NCBI GenBank assembly: GCA_038496445.1
Contig: JALMLS010000234.1
Span: 1-64,000, forward strand
Direction: 5' to 3'
Length of the DNA stretch: 64,000 bases
Source of the DNA: Trichosphaerium sp. ATCC 40318
Taxonomy: Eukaryota > Protista > Tubulinea
Shown here: positions 44,274 to 64,000 of the stretch, piece by piece
Numbering within the stretch: position 1 is the first letter of the stretch
Layout: each line of letters starts with the position of its first letter
Position numbers and translations under genes: made by a program
Notes under the pieces: model-generated
Seen by the model: only the letters and a program-made list of their open reading frames with translations
The model's database searches: none
Told to the model about the DNA's origin: nothing

Positions 44274-45344
44274 ATGTCTGGTACAGTAGAAATATACGGT
44301 TCAAAAACCCTAGAACGCTTCACAGACGGTATTTTACTAAAAGGCTTTCAAAACAACGGCTGGACAGCTACAATGCATAGCGCTAGTGACAATATAACAT
44401 ACAAAGCTGATTTAATACTCCTGCAACTTCACGGAGGGCCACATGCCGAAAAACAAGATAAACTAATGCTGCAACACTTAAGACGCGCCTCAAACAGTAA
44501 AAAAGCTATAATTGTGCTGCTACACAGACCAGACGAGATACAATCGCGTCACCCTGAACTATCTATACTGTTAAATGACTGGGAAGGTAAGCCCATGGCC
44601 GTTGTGTTTCTTGGGGATCTTCACATTAAAGACGTATTTTATCCGAACAAGCACAATATTTTAAAATCCGTAATTCCTCACGGGTTTTTTGACTTTGAAA
44701 AGACTTTGACAGAGTCACCGAATATTCTTATTGGTAGTCACACTACGTGGGGAGAGATGAGATCAATTGAACACGTGCTACAACTTCTAGGACACGTGTT
44801 TCAAAACTCAAAAGAAGAAAGAAGTTCAGTTATTGGTTACATTGGAGGAAAGCCTACTGAGCTAGTTTCACTAAAGGCAATAGCCCAAACGCATGCTATG
44901 ATCATTGATAGATATGGAATAACATTGATAGATGATAAAGAATACAATAGTATCGGTGTCAGTGATAAGAAAAATGTTGTCGTTGTAAACACAACAACTG
45001 ATCCAATTGATGTAACATTTAATGTTCAGATGTACTACCTTGAAGGCTCAGTACGTACTGGTGAATCTTCAGGAAGCCTTCATGCAAGTCAAGGTATACC
45101 TGTGATTATAGAAATGAATGGTTCAGAAAAGATAGAAGGTCTAGAAGTCATTAAAGTGCCATACTCTGATGGTTCTGATATAACCACAATTGACTTACAA
45201 GCAAGTGCTGAAACGATCATCAAGTGGTGTAAAAGTGGATACTATAAGAAGGCTATTGACATAAATACAAAGAGATCTAGAGTATGGTATAATACAGCAG
45301 TAGCTAAAGAGTACATTTCTTTATTTTCAAAGTTGCAACAATAA
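44274..45344 (+). CDS. Intronless GT-B (GT4-like) glycosyltransferase-like protein
   Basis: 356-aa uninterrupted ORF; VLLH, VIPHG, ESSGSLHASQGIPVI and C-terminal WYNTAVAKEYISLF match GT4 layout. Confidence 0.6.
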   Translation: MSGTVEIYGSKTLERFTDGILLKGFQNNGWTATMHSASDNITYKADLILLQLHGGPHAEKQDKLMLQHLRRASNSKKAIIVLLHRPDEIQSRHPELSILLNDWEGKPMAVVFLGDLHIKDVFYPNKHNILKSVIPHGFFDFEKTLTESPNILIGSHTTWGEMRSIEHVLQLLGHVFQNSKEERSSVIGYIGGKPTELVSLKAIAQTHAMIIDRYGITLIDDKEYNSIGVSDKKNVVVVNTTTDPIDVTFNVQMYYLEGSVRTGESSGSLHASQGIPVIIEMNGSEKIEGLEVIKVPYSDGSDITTIDLQASAETIIKWCKSGYYKKAIDINTKRSRVWYNTAVAKEYISLFSKLQQ

Positions 45345-48120: not shown

Positions 48121-50383
48121 ATGGCAAGCAACGCATCTTGTGATCTATTAAATCTACCAACATTGGCATCCATAACGGATGTAGTGCATTTTGTAAAAAG
48201 TGAGGTTCACAATCGAGGTACACCTCGTCTAGGCCTTATTTCGTGTATTCTTGGCGAACTAGAAGAGAACAATGGCGCATTTCCTCTTGTTTCCTTTGCT
48301 GAAACCTATAGCCGGTTATTATCCTTCTATCGCGGAGAGCTAGCGCATTGTGACGCCAAAACGAAGCGTAAAGAATGGTTTTTCGCAACAGCCACTGACT
48401 TTCCTAGCCGAGCTTCTACAGATCATGTCGAAGTTGACGTGGCACGGAAAACGCGTACTAAAGAAGAACAGACGCTATAAACTAAAGCACGCCCATTTAT
48501 GGCATTTTGTAAACAAATCTCTGTGTAATTGCCTTGGCTTTGCTACAGTACGATGAAATAATACGTATCACGTATTAAAGCAATACCAGGTTGTCGTGGA
48601 TGCCTGTAGAGTGCTTGGTATTAATAACGTACGTGCCCAAGTGTAAAAATGTGCTCCACGGTGACAAAATGACGTTGACAAGGTTTGGCCTATCATAAGC
48701 GAAATTCATGTTTGGATTGGCTTCAAGGAAGATAAAGAGAAGTTAAAAATACTACCACGTGTATCTGACATGTCTGTGTACGTACCAGATATTATGTTAC
48801 GGTGTTTTGGCAAAATGTCATTTTGTTTTTTCTTTTTTGACACTTGACACATTGCAGTCGACTTTTCTTTTTGAGATAGTTTTTTATTAATTTGTTTCAG
48901 GACTGATATGGTTGAAATTATGACACCATCAAGTACTATTGGTTGTCCTGTAGAAGAAAAGAATAGTTTCTCATGGTGCTATCAAAGAAACACGTGGGAT
49001 GAATGGGATGCTACATTATGTAGTGATATTCAGTTTGTAGCAATCCTTTTGACTAATACAGACATTGATGACGTACGTTGTTGGGTTTTTTATTGGATGT
49101 ACGAGCACTTTTTTGTTTAACTTTTTTTAGAATCTAAAGATTCTTCTTATGGCAGGATTGATGGATGATTGTCAGTTTACAAGGGTACCTTGCTCTTTTT
49201 TTGAACTAGCAAGGTGTTATAAGGATACAGAAGATCATGTTAGTGCCAGGAAATATTTCAATAAAGCGGTATTGCATTTCCTTTTTTTGCTACAACCAAA
49301 TGACAAAAAATGTAGGTGGAATCCTCAGAGAAGTTTTGTAATAATTGTAATGTCTATCCATATACAGAACAGGGAGATCATCTCTTTGAAACCGGTACAA
49401 AGCAATCTAATCGTATTAAATCACTAAGTATTTTATTCGTAGGCTTTTTTCTTGAAGCCCTTGAAGCTTATGCACGAGGTAGCTATTTCTCCAATACTGT
49501 TTCAGTTTTGCATGATGGACAGTGTCTTATTTGTTTTAGCTGCAAATGTTACTAGACGTTATCGATACATGTCATGGGATTCTGATCTTGCTAAGGAAAT
49601 GAATCAAATACCAAAACGTGTAGCTACAAAGATTATAACAAAGTTACAAGAACAACAGAAAGAAGAAGGATGGAAATATTTTCTAAGCTTTTTCGATTGT
49701 TTATTTACTTGGTTTGAAAAGAGTTCAATGAGGTTATCAAGTGCATCGGTAGATTACTTTAAGAGTGGTTGTACGAAGTTTCCTAGAGAGTTGTTACATC
49801 ATGTGCCATTAAAAGTAAAGAGAGATGACGAATCAACAACTAAAATGGACAAAACTGATCAAAAACCTTCGGTTGTTTTACCTAGAAAGAGACGCTTGCA
49901 AGCTACTCTTATTGGCCCTGTTAGTAAGAAGAGAAAGATAGAAACAAATAATACATGTGAAAGGTAAGGTCATTCAGTGTACTATCTTATTAACGGTTAA
50001 GTGCTTCCGCTCCTTTTATTGAAGAATCAGAGTTTCAAAAAAATAAGAAGAAACCTGATATTCCGGATACTGTCGCTGTTGGTACCCCAAACAAGTTGGT
50101 AAGTTGTACTACTCATCTCGTGTATTAAATCATTTTTAGGCAGATAAGGATTTTTGTACTATGATACATAGCGATGCGTTGTATAGGGTAGTAGCTGTTT
50201 TGAAAAATGTGAATTGTACAACAAAAGACAATCAACTAAAACAAATTATACATCAAGCTCTTGAATCTGGTACGCAAAATAAACCATAAGATAAGCTACA
50301 TTAATACTTGGGTCTATGTAGAGGTTATTGAAAGTAAAAGAAAACGTGTCAGAAGAAAGAAATCAATACAAACATTTACTTGA
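48121..50383 (+). CDS. MEN1: Menin homologue
   Basis: Collinear matches to menin motifs: [101 protein letters not shown]. Confidence 0.8.
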
Positions 50384-53420: not shown

Positions 53421-56400
53421 ATGTCAAAGAACAGCTCAAGCACCGTAAAAAGTACCCCGCCCAAAAGGAAGAAAACGTTGGGTGTAAGGAGGAGAATTGG
53501 TACTACTGGAGGATGGAATAAGCGTGTAGCGACACCAAAAGCGGAATTTGATGATGATTGGCAAAGTAGCCGCAATATACCCAAAAAAGTGCCTGAGGCG
53601 TTCAATATACAATTATCAGAGGTGAGTAAGCGTTATTGGCACTTTTTTAAATTAATCAGGAACAACGTGCTGTTTCCAAAGCTATTCATCGCGGAAAAAG
53701 CATATTCTTTACTGGCAGCGCTGGTACAGGTAAATCGGTACGAATTAGTTGATACAAACCAATTTCAGTTACTTTGATGCCTACGACGATAATATTGCTG
53801 CATTTCGCGTTATAATTATTAACGGTCCCACTAGACGTTGCTTCGATACATCATTAGAACATTACCGGACGACACAACCTACGTAACGGCTGCAACAGGT
53901 GTTGCTGCAGTAACTATTGGTGGCATGTACGTCAAAAGGAAAAAAACTTGCACGGCTGACACTTTGACATTCAGGACGATTCACTCGTTTGCTGGTATTG
54001 GTTTGGGTAGAGAAAATAAACTAGCACTTGCTGAGAAAGCACTAAAGTCGCGGGCAAAGCAGTACTGGCAGAAATGTAAAGGTACAATGAAGAGTTAATT
54101 AATCACGTTTCTTTTGTTTTTATTTTATTCTCAATTAACATGTTGTCCTTAGTGCTCATTATAGATGAAATATCCATGATTGATGCGGATCTAATGGATA
54201 AACTTGATTATGTTGCTAAGTATATACGACAAAAGAAAGAACCATTCGGAGGTACACACGTTTTCTTGTAGAGTTTTTGTTTTGAACTGTTTTTTTACTT
54301 GGTTTGTAGGCATTCAGCTTGTATGTTGTGGTGATTTTTTCCAGTTACCGCCTATCAATAGATCAGGTCCTAATGGTGAAGTAATGTTTGCTTTTGAGTC
54401 AAAGGCGTGGAATGAAACAATACAGGAATCGTTTGAGTTGACACAAGTTTACAGACAAGTAAACAACAAAAAAAAAAAGTGCAATCATTGCCTAACGTTG
54501 TTGTAGAAAGGAGACAATGACTTCATTAAGATGCTGAATCAAATACGTCATGGTCAGTGTAAATCATCAACCAAACAGATGCTTGAAGAATGCTTGTACA
54601 GAAAACTAGATGAATCAAATGGCGTTCAACCTACACATCTTTTCGCTTTAAACAAAGATGTTGGTACGAAGAAAAAATGAACTTTTTATTCATCTAGGTT
54701 GTACTAATGTTACTTCTTTTAAAGATAGAGAAAACTCTAGTAGGCTTACAGAGTTAACAGGACAGACAGTATTGTACAAAGCAAAAGACAGGTACTACCA
54801 AGTGAATAAATGCAGTTTTGTTTAAACTTCAATAGAGGTGCAGAACCTTATATAAGTCAAATGAAACGGCACTGCCAAGCTCCTGAAGAATTACTACTTA
54901 AAGTTGGAGCCCAAGTCATGTTGCTCAAGGTACGTTGATTACAAGAGAGTTTTAACATTCTTATACGATCATTAGAACACAGATGTTAAGAGAGGTTTGT
55001 GTAGTGGAGCAAGAGGTGTTGTGATTAGTTTTGACAAGACAAAAAAGCGTCAATACCCTATTGTTAGAGCACGTGTCTTTTTTAGTATTTAATGATGATT
55101 AATTAACTATGTATTATTAATATTGGTGTTTAGTTCGCTAATGGAATAGTTGAGACTGTTGAACTGACTAAGTGGGAAGTTAATGTCGCTGGGAGAGATG
55201 TGGCTGTACGATTTGAGTTCTTTTGTTTTAGTTGTGTCCACAGGAGCTTATTTAGTATTAGACACGTCATCAATTACCTTTGAGGCTCGCATGGGCATTG
55301 ACAATACATAAATGTCAAGGTCAAACTATTGAACATGCAGAGATGAAGCTTGATAATGTCTTTGAATAGTATGTTCATCTTTTTAGCATTCTGTCTGTTA
55401 CTAACTATTTCATTGTGCAGTGGTCAAGCATATGTAGCACTATCACGTGTATCTTCGTTGAAAGGATTACGATTACTTTCTTTTGACTCAAGGATAATTC
55501 GTGCGCACCCTAAAGTACTCATGTTCTACAAGGTACAGCATCAAAAGAACATTTTGTTCAACTCTTTATTTTTAATGTCTATTCTCACTTTATTCTCCTT
55601 CAGCGCTTTGATAATTACAAAAAACCACTTCAAAAAAATAAGCCGTACGTCTCGTGAATTCGTTGCTAAATAACGTGCTAACTTTGAGCTTAATTTAGTA
55701 CGAAAACATTTGTAAAAAAAGCACCAGCCAAGAAAAAACCCACTAAGAAAACACCACCAAAACCTGCATCTTCAACAGTACGTCTAGATAATCCACTCCC
55801 ATAGCTAGGTATTTTCGTTTCTGATATATTGCAAAGCCCTCAGGTGGAATGTTTGGACGTGGTGGCTTCAAATTCTCGCTACCAACAACAAGAACACAAC
55901 CTGTAATTTCACCAGACGAAGATGAAGATAAAGAAGAAGAGACTGAAGATAAACACATGAACGATGCGGTTACAGCAACACTTATACCTGTTGATACACC
56001 AGAAGAATCGGTATGTTTATTATGCTAAGATATATGCACACTGAAACAAATACAATAGGACGAAGAAGAATCTAGTGAAGATGAAGAAAAAAAATCAATT
56101 GATATTTTCAAGTTGGATGCAAAGCGAAGTGCTTTGCGTACTGGATTTAATTCATATGCTAATAGGTGAGTATTATTCACAGTTAAAAAACCCAAGTAAT
56201 AATTTATTTGTTAGGCAACGTCCACCACTCAAAGGAAAGAAACCGCTGCCTGTTGGTAAACCGAATTGTCTTACTGGTAAAGCATTTGTTGTTACTGGTG
56301 TTTTGGAGTCCCTTGAACGAGAAGAGGCTGAAGCACTTATCAAACAGTATGGAGGGTACGTCATAAAGAATTACGGGAAACGATTGATGATTGTGATTGT

Positions 56401-57753
56401 ATCTAACTGTTCCTCGTTAGTCTTGTTTTCAAATCAGTTGCTAAAAAGGTTACACATGCACTTGTTGGTGATCAATATGGAATATCTAAAATACGAACAA
56501 TTGTTGATAGATATATACCTATTATAAACGAGGATGGTTTATTTAAGATGATATCTACATTGGCTGAAGCCAAACCTGTAGAGAAGAAAAAAAAGAAACC
56601 AACAAGAAAAAGGTAAGACTCACTTTGTTAAGTTGAGGTATTAAGTCATTGTTTTAGGAAGTCTACGTCTCCTGTAAAACCAGCTGTGGAGTGGCCTATA
56701 CGTAGGAAGACATCACCAAAGTCTTCTACAAGGCTGAAATTGGAGGATTTTGATAACCAACCGAGAGTAAAGAGACAAAAGACTGATGATATTGTTTCTA
56801 TTGATTTGACTGATGACGATGATGTTATGACTGATATATCTGATTCTAGAAATCAAATGGATTCAAGAACAGAGTCTATTATTGCAAAACATATGGGTAT
56901 AGATAAATCAAAGGATGGACATAGTATAGCACAAGAGATGAGTGAATGGTTTGATGATCCAGATGAACTTGAAGATATTCTCAACAAAACAGTTTTCCAA
57001 CCTAAAAAAAAAACATCTACCTCTACACAACAAACACATAAAACAAACAAAGTTATCGATGATGACGATGACAAAGACACTGTTGATGATTTTTTCAGAA
57101 AATACAAGACAAAAAAAACAAACACAACAACACCATCGCCGAAGAAAGAAAAACCAGAATTTTTGAAGAAAAAAAAAGAAGACAAAAAAGATGGATTCTC
57201 GAGTGCTAGGGTTACTAAAGATACCAGCGAAAAAAAGACGAGTATTTTGGATCTATTAGAATCTATATCAGATGACGACGATGATATTGATATTGATGCA
57301 TTACTTGCAAGTCCACCGAGAACACAAAACTCTAAGCCAACTAAAGAAGACGAGAAAAAAGACTCTACTAACATTACTGTTGATGCTTTATTGGTAGATG
57401 ATGATAGTGATAGTGATAGTGAAGCTGAGTTTGCTAGAGTATTAGCAAAGTACAGAAAAGATAAAAAAGAAGCTACTGAAGAGAAAACAGAGAAAAAAGA
57501 TGTTAAGTCTTTAAAAAAAGCTGCAAAAGAAGCAGATAAAAAAAGAGTACTACTAGGCACGTGATTTTCGCGGTTTTCCCTTTTTATTGCCTATGACTAA
57601 CTAGTTATGTTATCTATAGATGATATTGCAAGTGCGCCAGTGTTCTCAAAGAGGGAAGCAGTGATTAGTGCAACAAAGAAGAAAAAAAGAAAAAGTCTAA
57701 TACCCGCTTCTAAAAAAGCTCTTTTTGATTCAGATGATTCTCTTGACTTTTAA
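53421..57753 (+). CDS. PIF1: PIF1 helicase fused to RFC1-type BRCT domain and acidic/basic tail
   Basis: [62 protein letters not shown]; then [34 protein letters not shown]. Confidence 0.9.
55069..55133 (+). other. GC-AG intron with GCACGTG donor in PIF1 (one of at least five)
   Basis: Removal restores the conserved PIVR|FANG; using the GT four nt downstream breaks the frame. Confidence 0.8.
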
Positions 57754-58157: not shown

Positions 58158-60022
58158 ATGTCGTACAAGCTCTTGTTGATTTGTTTTGTTTGGGTTTATC
58201 CTAGGGTACGATGATTTACGTTCTTGTCGATTTTTTCACCAACTATAGATACTGTGCTGAAAACGTTGTTATTGATACCTCTCGCGTCATTGCTGACACT
58301 GGTACAAAGTTTATTGGTGCTGGGTGCGCAAGATTCAACTTATTCCAAAACCTTTTCAAAATCACGTGATTAATAATTTAGATGGGAAGTAGAGCGTGTT
58401 TTAGCTCAAGAAGAATTTTTGACAAATAAACAGTTTCAATATTTGACGCGTCAAATAAGCCCAGGCGTTCTTCGTGTTGGTGGTATATCAGCAGATTTCG
58501 TCCGCTATGACTTGAAGAGTAGTATTGGGTAAGTTCTGGAGACTCACTTTGAGAAATCTCATGAGAAAACGTGGTTCTTTCTAATTTTTTTTACTATCTA
58601 GTGCTGGCGATTTTCCTATTCCAATAAAGGATATGCCTGTTTCTGTTTTCAAAAAAATAGTTGATTTCGCTGAAGCTGCTAATCTTGATTTCTTGTTCGA
58701 CTTGAACGAGTTATATGGTCGTAATTGTACAACTTCAACTTGTACTGGACCTTGGGATACAAGTAATCTAGAGTCCTTTTTAAATTACCTAAAAGAAAAT
58801 AACATTGGACCTATTCATGGGTTTGAACTCGGCAATGAGTTGACCCGTAAGCCTCATATATCTATTGAACAGAATATCCAAGATTACAACAGGCTAAATA
58901 AGATATTCACGGCTATTTGGCCGAACAACAAACCTCTTATTTTTGGACCGAGCACAAATTACTGTGACGAAGATGTTCAAAAGTTTATGTCAGGAACGAA
59001 GTCTTTTTTGAGTGGTTTTACGTATCATACGTACCCTGCTGGTGATGGAACTACTCTTGCACAAGATTTAGTAAGCGCTAATTGGCTAAGAAATAATATT
59101 TTAAAGCAAGACAAACAAGCTAATAGCAGTGGTTGTGTTAGCATTTGGAAACAAATAGGTACAAGGTGTTTTTTTTTGGTTCCACTTTAAAAAATCTCGT
59201 CCTGTTATTCCTCGGCTCTTATTTATACTCTAAGGACAAGCGAATGATATTAAACTATGGATAACTGAAACAAATTCTGCTTATAAAGATGCTGGCGGGG
59301 TACAATCTTAAAAAAAGACCAACCATCTCTTTGATTTTTCATCTTAATTTTGCATTTAGTTTACTGGCATGTTCCAAAACGGATTTTGGTATATTGCTTC
59401 CCTTGGGCAATATGCAAGCTCAGGTGTTACACTACACGCAAGATGGGCGCTTACAAACCATGATACATTGGGTCTCATAAACCTTAGAACAACACCTATA
59501 TCAGGTACAACAAAACGAAAATTTTAAAAAAAAACACAAATTAAGTTAACGCTATTTAAGTTGCTCCTGACTACTGGCCTGCCGTATTATACAAGCGAGT
59601 CATGGGTACCAAGGTATTGGGAACTACTACAGGTAATCACTGCTTTGTTAGAGCTATCAAACCTCTAAAGACCTTCTTTAGATAGCAACGGACAAGTGTT
59701 GGCTTATGCTCATTGTGCAAGTTCTTCTCAGTCTCAAGGCGCTGTTGTTGTCATGTACGCAAACCCAGGACCTCTAATAATTACTTTGAATATATCTGGA
59801 TTCAACGCAATGTTCCCAAGAAATGAGTACATCTTTACGGCAGACACATTGCAATCCACTGTTTCTAAGTTAAATGGACAAAAACTTCTACTTGGATCTG
59901 ATGGTACTTTACCTCCAATGCAGGCGAAGGTGGTTACATCTGGAGACTTTGTTGTACCTCCTAGATCATATGGGTTTGCTGTTTTCCCTTCAGCGGGTGT
60001 TGCTGCATGTGCTGGCAAGTAA
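58158..60022 (+). CDS. GH79 heparanase-like / beta-glucuronidase, secreted
   Basis: LRVGGISAD, FELGNE, LWITETNSAY, PDYWPAVLYKRVMGTKVL, LAYAHCA. Confidence 0.9.
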
Positions 60023-61761: not shown

Positions 61762-64000
61762 ATGATGGACCACACGCTAGAAGAAAACGTTCCCGTATTT
61801 CGACCAACTGTAGAAGAATTTAAGGATTTTTCAGGCTATTTGGAGAAGGTGAGCGCTGTAGTGGGCGATTTGGGTATTTGTAAGGTTATTCCTCCAAAAG
61901 TCTGGTTACCGGACATAAAATACGAAGATATAGACTTCAAGATACCTACACCAATACGACAAATCGTCACAGGCTCTCGTGGATATTATGGGCAGTTAAA
62001 CGTTGAGGAAGAAGCGATCTCAGTTCAAAAGTTCAAAATTGAAGCAGATGAAGCTTTGAGTGCTGCAAGATTAGGAAAACTGGATTTGAAGGACATTGAG
62101 CGAAAATTTTGGAAGACATTAACGTATAATCCACCTATGTATGGCGCAGACATGCTTGGATCATTATTTGACCCTAAACATTGGGGTTGGAACTTACAGA
62201 AATTGGAAACAGTATTAGATTTGCTTGGCGTTGATCTACCAGGTATTACACAACCATATCTTTATTTTGGCATGTGGAAAGCCGCATTTGCATGGCACAC
62301 TGAAGGTACGATTTAATTTTATGCTTGGTTCACGAAATTAAACCTCTTACTTTCCTTCATTGGGTTTATACATACTTATCGTCCTTTTATCGTTAAAATT
62401 TATTTTTATCGTTTTTCTAACTTCACTCTGCAGACATGGATTTATATAGCATAAATTACCTACACCATGGGTCCCCTAAACAGTGGTATGCTATTCCTAG
62501 AACAGAAAGCGCGCGTTTTGAGCGGTTAGCGGAGGTACAATTTGTTTTCGGTTTTTTCACTGAATCTCGTCAGTATCCTGTCAGATTTTTTTGACACTTT
62601 TTGTAGAGTAGGTTCCATGAAGACTACAGACTATGCAAGCAATTTTTGAGACACAAGACTTCGATAATTTCTCCGTACACGCTTCAAAAGAACAATGTAA
62701 CAGTAAATGCAGTAACACAACATCCTGGCGAGTTTGTCATCACTTTCCCTTATGCCTATCATGCAGGATTTAACTATGGTACGCCTTAGCATGATGATAA
62801 ATATCCAACGCGTCATATACCCTTACTCTGTTGGCTCACGTATCTTTGCTTAGGGTTCAATATTGCCGAAGCAGTAAATTTTGCAATTCCAAATTGGATT
62901 GATTTCGGCAAGAAAGCATCTGTTTGTACTTGTCACAAAGATGCTGTTAGTATAAATATTGGTATACTAGAGGAGAGATATGAGGTAGGAAGACTTTAAT
63001 TACTTGAAACCGCTTGCTTACAGGTTGTTGTAGATGTTACAAAATGGTGACTCTTTAGATGAGATAATACCAAGTGGGACAAAAAGAAAACGGCTTGATG
63101 TTGCCTTACTCACACCAAAAGCAAAAAGAGCACGTACACGTGCGGCAGCAGCAGAAGCTAGAGCGCTAGCAAAAGCAGCAAAGGCAAAATCAGTGCGTGA
63201 AATGTCAAACCAAACATGTGACATTTTCTTATTTTTTTCTGATTTATTTTGCACATTACTTTTGCTCTCGAAGCAAATTTTTCTTTACCTTCTCTTGTGT
63301 GTATGAGCTCAAACACTAAATATACTTTAGAAGAAAAAGGCTTCTCCTAGAAAGTCAAAAAAGAAGGCAGGAAGCAAATCAAAAGCTGCACCTGCAGTCA
63401 GAAAGACAAGGTCTATTAGTATGAGACGAAAGGCAAAGATTAACGTAAGTTGATGCTAGCCATCACCCCAAAAACAAACAAACAAACCAAAACCTCCCTC
63501 TCACCCTTCCCTTGACGTTGATCGAACGTGCAACGGTCCGCCAAACCCCAAAAATTTGTTTCTCAACAAAAAAAAAACGCGAAAAAAAAAACTTTCCTCC
63601 TTCAGTTTCTGGGCGCAAAAAAAGGGAGCTTGTACTCGCTAGCTCATTACTTTACACGCCCTCCTACTTTTGGACAACACAATTTTTTCAAACGTGTATC
63701 TGTTGTACATAGCTTTAATGACCAAAAAAATAAAAAAAGCCTATTTATTTGTATAGAAGTTTTAGTCACAAAAAAAAACGAAAACAAAACATGAGTGCGT
63801 GAGTGATATCTATTTCATATTTTGAATAGATTTTACTCTACCATGCTTGTGCGAGTTGTTTAGTTTATGTGCCACTAATTCAGAGGTGCTAGTTCAGAAA
63901 TTAAATAGCGGTCCAAACAAACAATAGTTCAGCAGTAATCAGTGTGATTCCTTTTTTTTTCTTCTTTTTTAACGTGGTGTTTTTCAGGGCGGAAGACAAA
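61762..64000 (+). CDS. KDM4: JmjN/JmjC KDM4-family histone demethylase, probably continues past the window
   Basis: [85 protein letters not shown]. Confidence 0.93.

What the first reader, a model, noticed from the sequence alone, without database searches (positions are those of the whole stretch)
48121..50383. Full-length menin homologue outside animals
Seen: spliced exons give segments collinear with human menin, compared from memory: LRSIDDVVRLF ~ [43 protein letters not shown] ~ [33 protein letters not shown]; HIYPY ~ NVYPY; LRFYDGICKWEEGS ~ [14 protein letters not shown]. Basic NLS-like C-terminal patches are also present. Established: menin is the MLL1/2 scaffold, studied almost only in animals and absent from yeasts. 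Inference: menin predates animals and may have an MLL-independent role here.
Basis: partly seen in the sequence, partly recalled or inferred. Interest (0 to 1): 0.72.

Follow-up and report, generated by a model that had tools for sequence, protein, structure and literature searches.

The report
Divergent menin gene in an amoeba
A 12-exon gene in what other agents of this scan call a marine amoeba encodes a very divergent but probably genuine relative of menin, the animal chromatin scaffold and tumour suppressor, which would make the family older than animals; how it works here is untested.

Summary
An orthologue on a marine metagenome contig (L001) is 53% identical, in exons only, with synonymous sites saturated, so the gene is real and constrained.

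Menin homology is supported for two separate, collinear parts:
- **Exon 1.** The only Pfam hit is Menin (E 0.2). Its AlphaFold model finds human menin as the top 20 PDB hits (residues 5-82 on menin 3-106) and a Menin cluster as the best ESM Atlas match.
- **Transglutaminase-like core.** The spliced 33-aa segment finds only menin chains in the PDB (23 of 23; best E 0.053).

Exon 6 carries a TPR motif, as the menin palm does. The exon-9 region gave no menin match.

The 552-aa spliced protein has no reference, so the decisive whole-protein HMM search and fold were left out.

"Outside animals" rests on other agents' identification of the genome (probably Trichosphaerium), which I did not test. MLL-independence is untested. 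The Cys at the nucleophile position also occurs in sea-anemone menin, and intact triads in this family are already published.

Verdict: a new member of a known family, of moderate interest. The scan noted this same stretch before (s1-411865).

The parts
48121..50383 (+). Menin-like gene, start codon to stop codon: 12 exons, 552 aa (model A)
   Evidence: Splice model. The orthologue L001 matches in exons only.
48121..48367 (+). Exon 1 (aa 1-83): N-terminal domain of menin type
   Evidence: Pfam Menin is the only hit, E 0.2, aa 14-48 on profile positions 9-43. AF2 model with pLDDT 64.5. The Foldseek PDB top 20 are all menin. VIA aligns residues 5-82 on menin 3-106. The ESM Atlas top hit is a Menin cluster.
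48408..48547 (+). Exon 2 (aa 83-129): start of the transglutaminase-like 'thumb'; ends in CNCLGFAT with Cys124
   Evidence: 70% identical to L001, and C-N-C-L-G-F-A-T is invariant. Part of the segment that finds only menin in the PDB.
48590..48628 (+). Exon 3 (aa 130-142): [13 protein letters not shown], the helix of the transglutaminase-like core
   Evidence: 11 of 13 residues identical in L001. Aligned to menin.
48683..48777 (+). Exon 4 (aa 143-174): SEIHVW strand with His151
   Evidence: Aligned to human menin S178-W183. The donor at 48778 was preferred over 48742 because L001 has a phase-2 intron at the matching place; no RNA evidence.
48901..49072 (+). Exon 5 (aa 174-231): rest of the thumb
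   Evidence: 49% identical to L001. No database match of its own.
49131..49268 (+). Exon 6 (aa 232-277): TPR motif (FFELARCYKD...KYFNKA), the expected palm domain
   Evidence: Pfam TPR_2 E 0.008 in the window and TPR_19 E 4e-4 in L001. The profile finds TPR proteins in the PDB.
49316..49394 (+). Exon 7 (aa 278-304): NVYPY motif
   Evidence: 64% identical to L001. No menin hit when read through intron 7.
49443..49478 (+). Exon 8 (aa 304-316). The preceding 48-nt intron is in frame and has no stop, so its removal is inferred
   Evidence: GT-AG boundaries. L001 is also interrupted here. No RNA evidence.
49540..49963 (+). Exon 9 (aa 316-457): helical region with [12 protein letters not shown], then a basic tail (PRKRRLQ, SKKRKIE)
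   Evidence: 55-62% identical to L001. AF2 gives a generic three-helix bundle with no menin match.
50002..50098 (+). Exon 10 (aa 457-489): low-complexity, basic
   Evidence: Splice model. Weak match to L001.
50140..50269 (+). Exon 11 (aa 490-533)
   Evidence: 29% identical to L001. No family hit.
50322..50383 (+). Exon 12 (aa 533-552 plus TGA): basic patch SKRKRVRRKK

Best explanation
This is an intact, selectively constrained gene for a highly divergent member of the menin family (Pfam PF05053). Shown or supported here: a menin-type N-terminal domain, then a transglutaminase-like 'thumb' core, then a TPR-type motif where the palm domain lies, in the order found in animal menin. Inferred: the helical exon-9 region is the end of the palm plus the fingers domain, and the basic C-terminal patches are nuclear localisation signals.

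Most likely mechanism, inferred by analogy: a nuclear scaffold whose thumb and palm form a cavity that binds short peptide motifs of partner proteins and tethers them to chromatin. The partner is unknown.

The host is probably an amoebozoan, by other agents' notes. If so, the family predates animals.
For: **The gene is real**
- 12 exons with GT-AG introns and one open frame.
- The orthologue on L001 is 52.7% identical over 474 aligned residues, with pN 0.32 against pS 0.905.
- Similarity to L001 is confined to the exons, with no synteny in the neighbouring genes.

**N-terminal domain**
- Menin is the only Pfam family hit by exon 1, at collinear profile positions.
- The AF2 model of exon 1 alone, with no templates, has human menin as Foldseek ranks 1-20: best E 0.25, probability 0.94, TM by query 0.57-0.64 for most (0.46-0.48 for five), 22-33% identity. 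The first other protein has TM 0.28.
- VIA-align puts residues 5-82 on menin 2/3-106, with 77 aligned, rmsd about 3 and Z 3.4-7.7.
- In a search that ignores sequence, sea-anemone menin 3re2 ranks 4th of 48,161 representative chains.
- In the ESM Atlas the best match is 'putative Menin (Fragment)', PF05053 in 100% of members, TM 0.65.

**Transglutaminase-like core**
- The spliced 33-aa segment finds 23 PDB sequences at E <= 10 and all 23 are menin. The best is Nematostella, E 0.053, at chain positions 130-160; in human menin it aligns to 155-183.

**Palm**
- TPR hits in exon 6 of both orthologues.
Against: - No match reaches a conventional whole-database threshold: Pfam 10.4 bits against a cut-off of 23.6, Foldseek E 0.25, phmmer E 0.053.
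- The L001 exon 1 does not hit Pfam Menin.
- PDB searches with exons 1, 2, 5, 7-8 and 9 by reference found no menin.
- The purely geometric Z scores for exon 1 are tied with unrelated helical proteins.
- The exon-9 region shows nothing specific to menin.
- The AF2 models come from alignments of only 2-3 sequences, with pLDDT 64-70.
- The splice model has no RNA support; no sequencing run was listed.
- The identity of the organism was not tested here.
Confidence: 0.8

Rival explanations
1. It is an active transglutaminase-like (papain-fold) enzyme rather than, or as well as, a passive scaffold. Cys124 and His151 would act on a bound peptide, as a peptidase, transglutaminase or deamidase.
For: - Cys124 sits in a C-x-x-F-A motif, which I recall (not tested) as typical of active transglutaminase-like enzymes, and it is invariant in L001.
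- His151 aligns with human His181.
- A published survey says human menin lacks the Cys but that some family members keep a full triad, and that even Ser-type menin might act as a peptidase (PMC10318531; PMC3495828).
Against: - Sea-anemone menin (3re2) has Cys at the same position, so the Cys is not special to this lineage, and I know of no reported activity for any menin.
- The third, acidic triad residue could not be placed from the pieces available.
- No activity data exist.
Confidence: 0.15
2. The gene is a menin, but it entered this lineage by horizontal transfer from a holozoan or an animal rather than by descent. Or the contig is not from an amoeba. In either case it says nothing about a pre-animal origin.
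For: - The family looks very patchy. A HMMER scan of 1.84 billion representative proteins with exon 9 found one true relative, a metagenome fragment.
- The metagenome pattern scan found none.
- I did not verify the organism myself.
Against: - Only 22-25% identity to human and cnidarian menin in the N-terminal domain. The core segment scores 17 bits against Nematostella, whereas the human fragment scores 43 bits against Nematostella.
- Eleven short introns, and a 53%-identical orthologue with the same exon structure in a second organism of different G+C content.
- Many independent agents' notes on this genome call it an amoeba.
Confidence: 0.08
3. It is not a menin. It is an unrelated helical, transglutaminase-like and TPR protein whose local resemblances to menin arose by chance or by convergence.
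For: - Every single match is below the usual significance threshold.
- Most exon pieces find nothing.
- The C-terminal third is generic.
Against: - Two non-overlapping regions independently pick menin as the best or only match. They do so in four different libraries: 24,736 Pfam families, 177,635 PDB sequences, 350,542 PDB chains and the ESM Atlas cluster representatives. The order and position are also right.
- The exon-9 model serves as an internal control. It is a helical piece of the same quality and it does not attract menin.
Confidence: 0.06

Closest known systems
Human menin (MEN1; PDB 3u84, 4gq3 and others)
   Same: The N-terminal domain superposes, model residues 5-82 on menin 3-106 at 25% identity. 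The thumb core aligns without gaps to residues 155-183, with S178, E179, H181 and W183 kept. A TPR motif lies in the palm position. The C-terminus has basic patches.
   Different: Shorter: 552 aa against the 611-aa chain in 8gpn. It has Cys124 where human menin has Ser154, and Ile where human has Asp180. The exon-9 region is not detectably similar with these tools. Whether it binds MLL, JunD or LEDGF is unknown.
Nematostella vectensis menin (PDB 3re2)
   Same: It is the best sequence match of the spliced core segment (E 0.053) and shares the Cys at the nucleophile position, DCFGVAF against NCLGFAT. It ranks 4th of 48,161 chains in the structure-only search with exon 1.
   Different: It is an animal protein and far closer to human menin. 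The human core fragment scores 42.7 bits against it; the window segment scores 17.3 bits.
Transglutaminase-like / papain-fold superfamily (PNGase, Rad4/XPC, CEP76, vasohibins)
   Same: The Cys-x-x-Phe-Ala helix start and the His-x-Trp strand are the superfamily's hallmarks (from my memory of the superfamily, not tested). Menin is classed in this superfamily (PMC10318531; PMC3495828).
   Different: No Pfam Transglut_core hit on the pieces. The flanking N-terminal domain is specific to menin.

Membership tests
Menin (Pfam PF05053) | Whole-protein match to the Menin HMM above the gathering score (23.6 bits) | tested here: inconclusive
   Only exon pieces could be submitted. Exon 1 scores 10.4 bits, E 0.2, as the only family hit, aa 14-48 on profile positions 9-43. 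The other pieces and all L001 pieces gave no Menin hit. The spliced 552-aa protein has no reference and was not submitted.
Menin (Pfam PF05053) | Menin-type N-terminal domain fold | tested here: met
   Foldseek PDB ranks 1-20 are all menin, TM by query up to 0.64. VIA aligns 5-82 on 3-106 with rmsd about 3. The ESM Atlas top cluster is Menin, TM 0.65. The model's pLDDT is only 64.5.
Menin (Pfam PF05053) | Transglutaminase-like thumb core: the helix after the nucleophile position, then the S-E-x-H-x-W strand | tested here: met
   The spliced 33-aa segment finds only menin chains in the PDB, 23 of 23, best E 0.053, at the expected chain positions. The reverse check scored 66 against 23.3 +/- 3.5 for shuffles.
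Menin (Pfam PF05053) | TPR-containing palm domain after the thumb | tested here: inconclusive
   One TPR motif in exon 6 of both orthologues: E 0.008 and 4e-4, below the gathering scores. The PDB profile hits TPR proteins, not menin.
Menin (Pfam PF05053) | Fingers domain and C-terminal part | tested here: inconclusive
   Exon 9 gave no menin hit by phmmer against the PDB, by the 1.84-billion-protein scan, by Foldseek, by VIA or by the Atlas. An isolated fragment may fold wrongly, so this is not evidence of absence.
Menin (Pfam PF05053) | Collinear order of the domains | tested here: met
   aa 5-82 align to menin 3-106 and aa 125-153 to menin 155-183. The TPR lies at aa 249-277, and the YPY and FFDxxxxW motifs follow.
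Menin as MLL1/2-JunD-LEDGF scaffold (function) | Conserved residues of the central peptide-binding pocket | tested here: inconclusive
   From a tool alignment, S178, E179, H181 and W183 are kept and D180 is Ile. My alignment from memory suggests Y319, F238 and E363 are kept, while Y276, M278, N282, M322, Y323 and W341 are changed. That alignment was not verified by any tool.
Menin as MLL1/2-JunD-LEDGF scaffold (function) | A KMT2A/B-type partner with a menin-binding motif in the same genome | not testable with these tools
   Only this window is readable. The scan's notes on this genome list no KMT2- or MLL-type finding.
Active transglutaminase-like / papain-fold enzymes | Complete Cys-His-Asp/Glu triad | tested here: inconclusive
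   Cys124 is invariant in L001 and His151 aligns to human H181. The third residue could not be assigned. Nematostella menin also has the Cys.

The most novel reading that the evidence does not exclude
Menin was already present in the common ancestor of Amoebozoa and opisthokonts (Amorphea). It would then be an ancient Cys/His transglutaminase-like, peptide-binding chromatin factor whose pocket differs from the animal MLL/JunD pocket. The MLL1/2 partnership would be a later, holozoan specialisation, and the family would have been lost many times, for example in yeasts and nematodes (from memory, not tested). No paper in the library searched links menin to Amoebozoa or Capsaspora.
Probability: 0.3. 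Interest if true: 0.65.

Novelty: new member of a known kind. Interest (0 to 1): 0.47.

Why it matters
Menin is a drug target in leukaemia and a tumour suppressor, and it has been studied almost only in animals. A constrained orthologue in an amoebozoan would date the family to before the split of amoebae and opisthokonts. It would also offer a natural variant, with Cys at the old nucleophile position and an altered pocket, for asking what menin did before it became the MLL1/2 adaptor.

The gain is limited. The family's fold and superfamily membership are known, and intact triads in some members are already published (PMC10318531). Domain databases that I could not query may already list non-animal members.

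Tried and rejected
- **Pfam on exon pieces.** I scanned nine pieces of the window and nine of L001. Only window exon 1 touched Menin.
- **PDB sequence searches by reference.** Exons 1, 9 and 7-8 (read through the in-frame intron), plus two-sequence profiles of exons 1, 2, 5 and 6, found no menin.
- **ESM Atlas feature search with exon 1.** No usable hit.
- **The single big HMMER scan, run with exon 9.** It returned one true relative, fragment P0001, and one spurious repeat protein. In hindsight exon 1 or exon 2 would have been the better query.
- **Word search with exon 9.** Nothing.
- **Metagenome pattern scan.** It returned only two G+C-rich contigs that match the pattern by chance and show no coding context.
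- **Sequencing runs.** None was listed, so there is no RNA evidence and read laying was not used.
- **AF2 of exon 9.** It gave a generic three-helix bundle.
- **Literature.** No paper was found on menin outside animals. The chromatin-evolution survey does not mention menin.

**Left out for lack of a reference:** any search or fold with the 552-aa spliced protein, or with spliced multi-exon stretches.

- Exon translations typed into the script to find their coordinates.

Full report
**1. What is there**

The region 48121-50383 (+) is an intron-rich eukaryotic gene in a window of 37% G+C. Following the open frames and GT...AG boundaries gives 12 exons and 11 introns of 38-123 nt. Donors are mostly GTA(C/A)G and acceptors are pyrimidine-rich. 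The result is one 552-codon frame from the first ATG of its ORF to a TGA at 50381-50383.

Two choices in the model are inferred:
- The exon-4 donor. I preferred 48778, a GTACGT donor, because the orthologue has a phase-2 intron at the matching place. The alternative is 48742.
- Removal of a 48-nt intron at 49395-49442 that is in frame and has no stop.

No sequencing run was listed for this stretch, so no junction has RNA support.

**2. Is it a real gene?**

The one HMMER scan of 1.84 billion representative proteins, run with exon 9, found a 179-aa fragment at 53% identity. Its contig, from an ENA marine metagenome assembly and fetched as L001, carries an orthologue of the whole gene with nearly the same exon structure.

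- Over 474 aligned residues the two proteins are 52.7% identical.
- Non-synonymous difference is 0.32 per site, while synonymous sites are saturated at 0.905.
- tblastx similarity between the contigs is confined to the exons of this gene. The neighbouring genes are not shared.

The gene is therefore protein-coding and under purifying selection in at least two fairly distant organisms.

**3.

All four quoted window segments are in the spliced product, in the stated order.

Its local alignment score against the spliced protein is 66, against 23.3 +/- 3.5 for 2000 shuffles.
- The other three fragments are weak one by one: 102, 7 and 75 of 2000 shuffles reached the observed scores.

**4. Is it menin?**

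The evidence comes from pieces.

(a) Exon 1 (82 aa)
- Its only Pfam hit is Menin: 10.4 bits, E 0.2, aa 14-48 on profile positions 9-43 of 678. That is the right end of the model.
- AlphaFold on exon 1 plus its L001 counterpart, without templates, gave three helices at pLDDT 64.5.
- Foldseek against 350,542 PDB chains returned human menin at ranks 1-20: best E 0.25, probability 0.94, TM by query 0.57-0.64 for most, 22-33% identity. The first other protein had TM 0.28.
- VIA-align placed model residues 5-82 on menin residues 2/3-106, with 77 aligned, rmsd about 3 and Z 3.4-7.7.
- In a search that ignores sequence, Nematostella menin ranked 4th of 48,161 representatives. It was tied on Z with unrelated helical proteins but had by far the highest identity.
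- In the ESM Atlas the best shape match was a cluster named 'putative Menin (Fragment)', PF05053 in 100% of members, TM 0.65.

(b) The thumb core
- The most conserved block is cut by introns 2 and 3, so no single exon can find it.
It found 23 sequences at E <= 10, all of them menin. The best was Nematostella at E 0.053, and human menin gave E about 0.45. Alignments were gap-free, to chain residues 130-160 and 155-183.

(c) Exon 6
- It hits TPR models in both orthologues and TPR proteins in the PDB. From memory, the menin palm is built of TPR motifs.

None of these matches is significant on its own. However, two non-overlapping regions pick the same family out of four libraries, at collinear positions. 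Chance does not plausibly explain that.

The exon-9 model is a useful control. It is a helical piece of similar quality (pLDDT 70), and it finds only generic bundles and no menin.

**5. What is not shown**

- The exon-9 region and the C-terminal exons have no tool-supported link to menin, so 'full-length' is only partly supported.
- I did not test the organism's identity. Several other agents of this scan call the genome a marine amoeba, probably Trichosphaerium.
- No partner protein could be looked for.

**6. Mechanism**

The best-supported reading is a nuclear scaffold of menin type. The basic patches at aa 430-450 and 537-546 look like nuclear localisation signals.

In the one stretch where a tool alignment gives residue correspondence, positions that I recall as pocket-lining are mostly kept: S178, E179, H181 and W183 are conserved and D180 is Ile. 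My alignment from memory suggests that several MLL-contacting residues are changed (Y276, M278, N282, Y323, W341). This is a lead, not a result.

Cys124 occupies the old nucleophile position in a C-x-x-F-A motif and is invariant in L001. Nematostella menin has the same Cys. A published survey already states that some menin family members keep the full triad (PMC10318531; see also PMC3495828). An enzymatic role is therefore possible, but this gene does not specifically indicate one.

**7. Novelty**

The family, its fold and its place in the papain/transglutaminase superfamily are known. What may be new is the lineage.

No paper in the searchable library mentions menin together with Amoebozoa or Capsaspora. 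A broad survey of chromatin-protein evolution does not mention menin at all. Domain databases could not be queried and may already list non-animal members.

I file it as a new member of a known kind, of moderate interest.

Noticed in passing
window 61762-62313 (+): An ORF piece with a JmjN domain (Pfam E 3e-13). It is probably an exon of a JmjC-type histone demethylase gene, about 11 kb downstream of the menin-like gene.
   Followed up: no
window 58633-59187 (+): An exon-sized ORF matching the N-terminal domain of glycosyl hydrolase family 79, heparanase-like (E 5e-18).
   Followed up: no
window 56075-56524 and 56686-57561 (+): A BRCT domain (E 1e-7) lies just upstream of a 292-aa ORF that has no Pfam hit of its own. 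Another reader noted a PIF1-BRCT fusion here.
   Followed up: no
window 44274-45341 (+): An intronless 356-aa ORF with no Pfam family. This is unusual in so intron-rich a region, and acquisition by transfer is possible.
   Followed up: no
L001 9912-9953: The metagenomic orthologue has an extra intron inside the equivalent of window exon 9. Its first intron is shifted by one or two codons and sits in a different phase.
   Followed up: partly
L002 3542-3643; L003 2509-2610: The two metagenome loci returned by the pattern scan are 61-64% G+C. They match only the back-translated pattern [10 protein letters not shown] and show no coding context, so they are chance matches and not relatives.
   Followed up: yes
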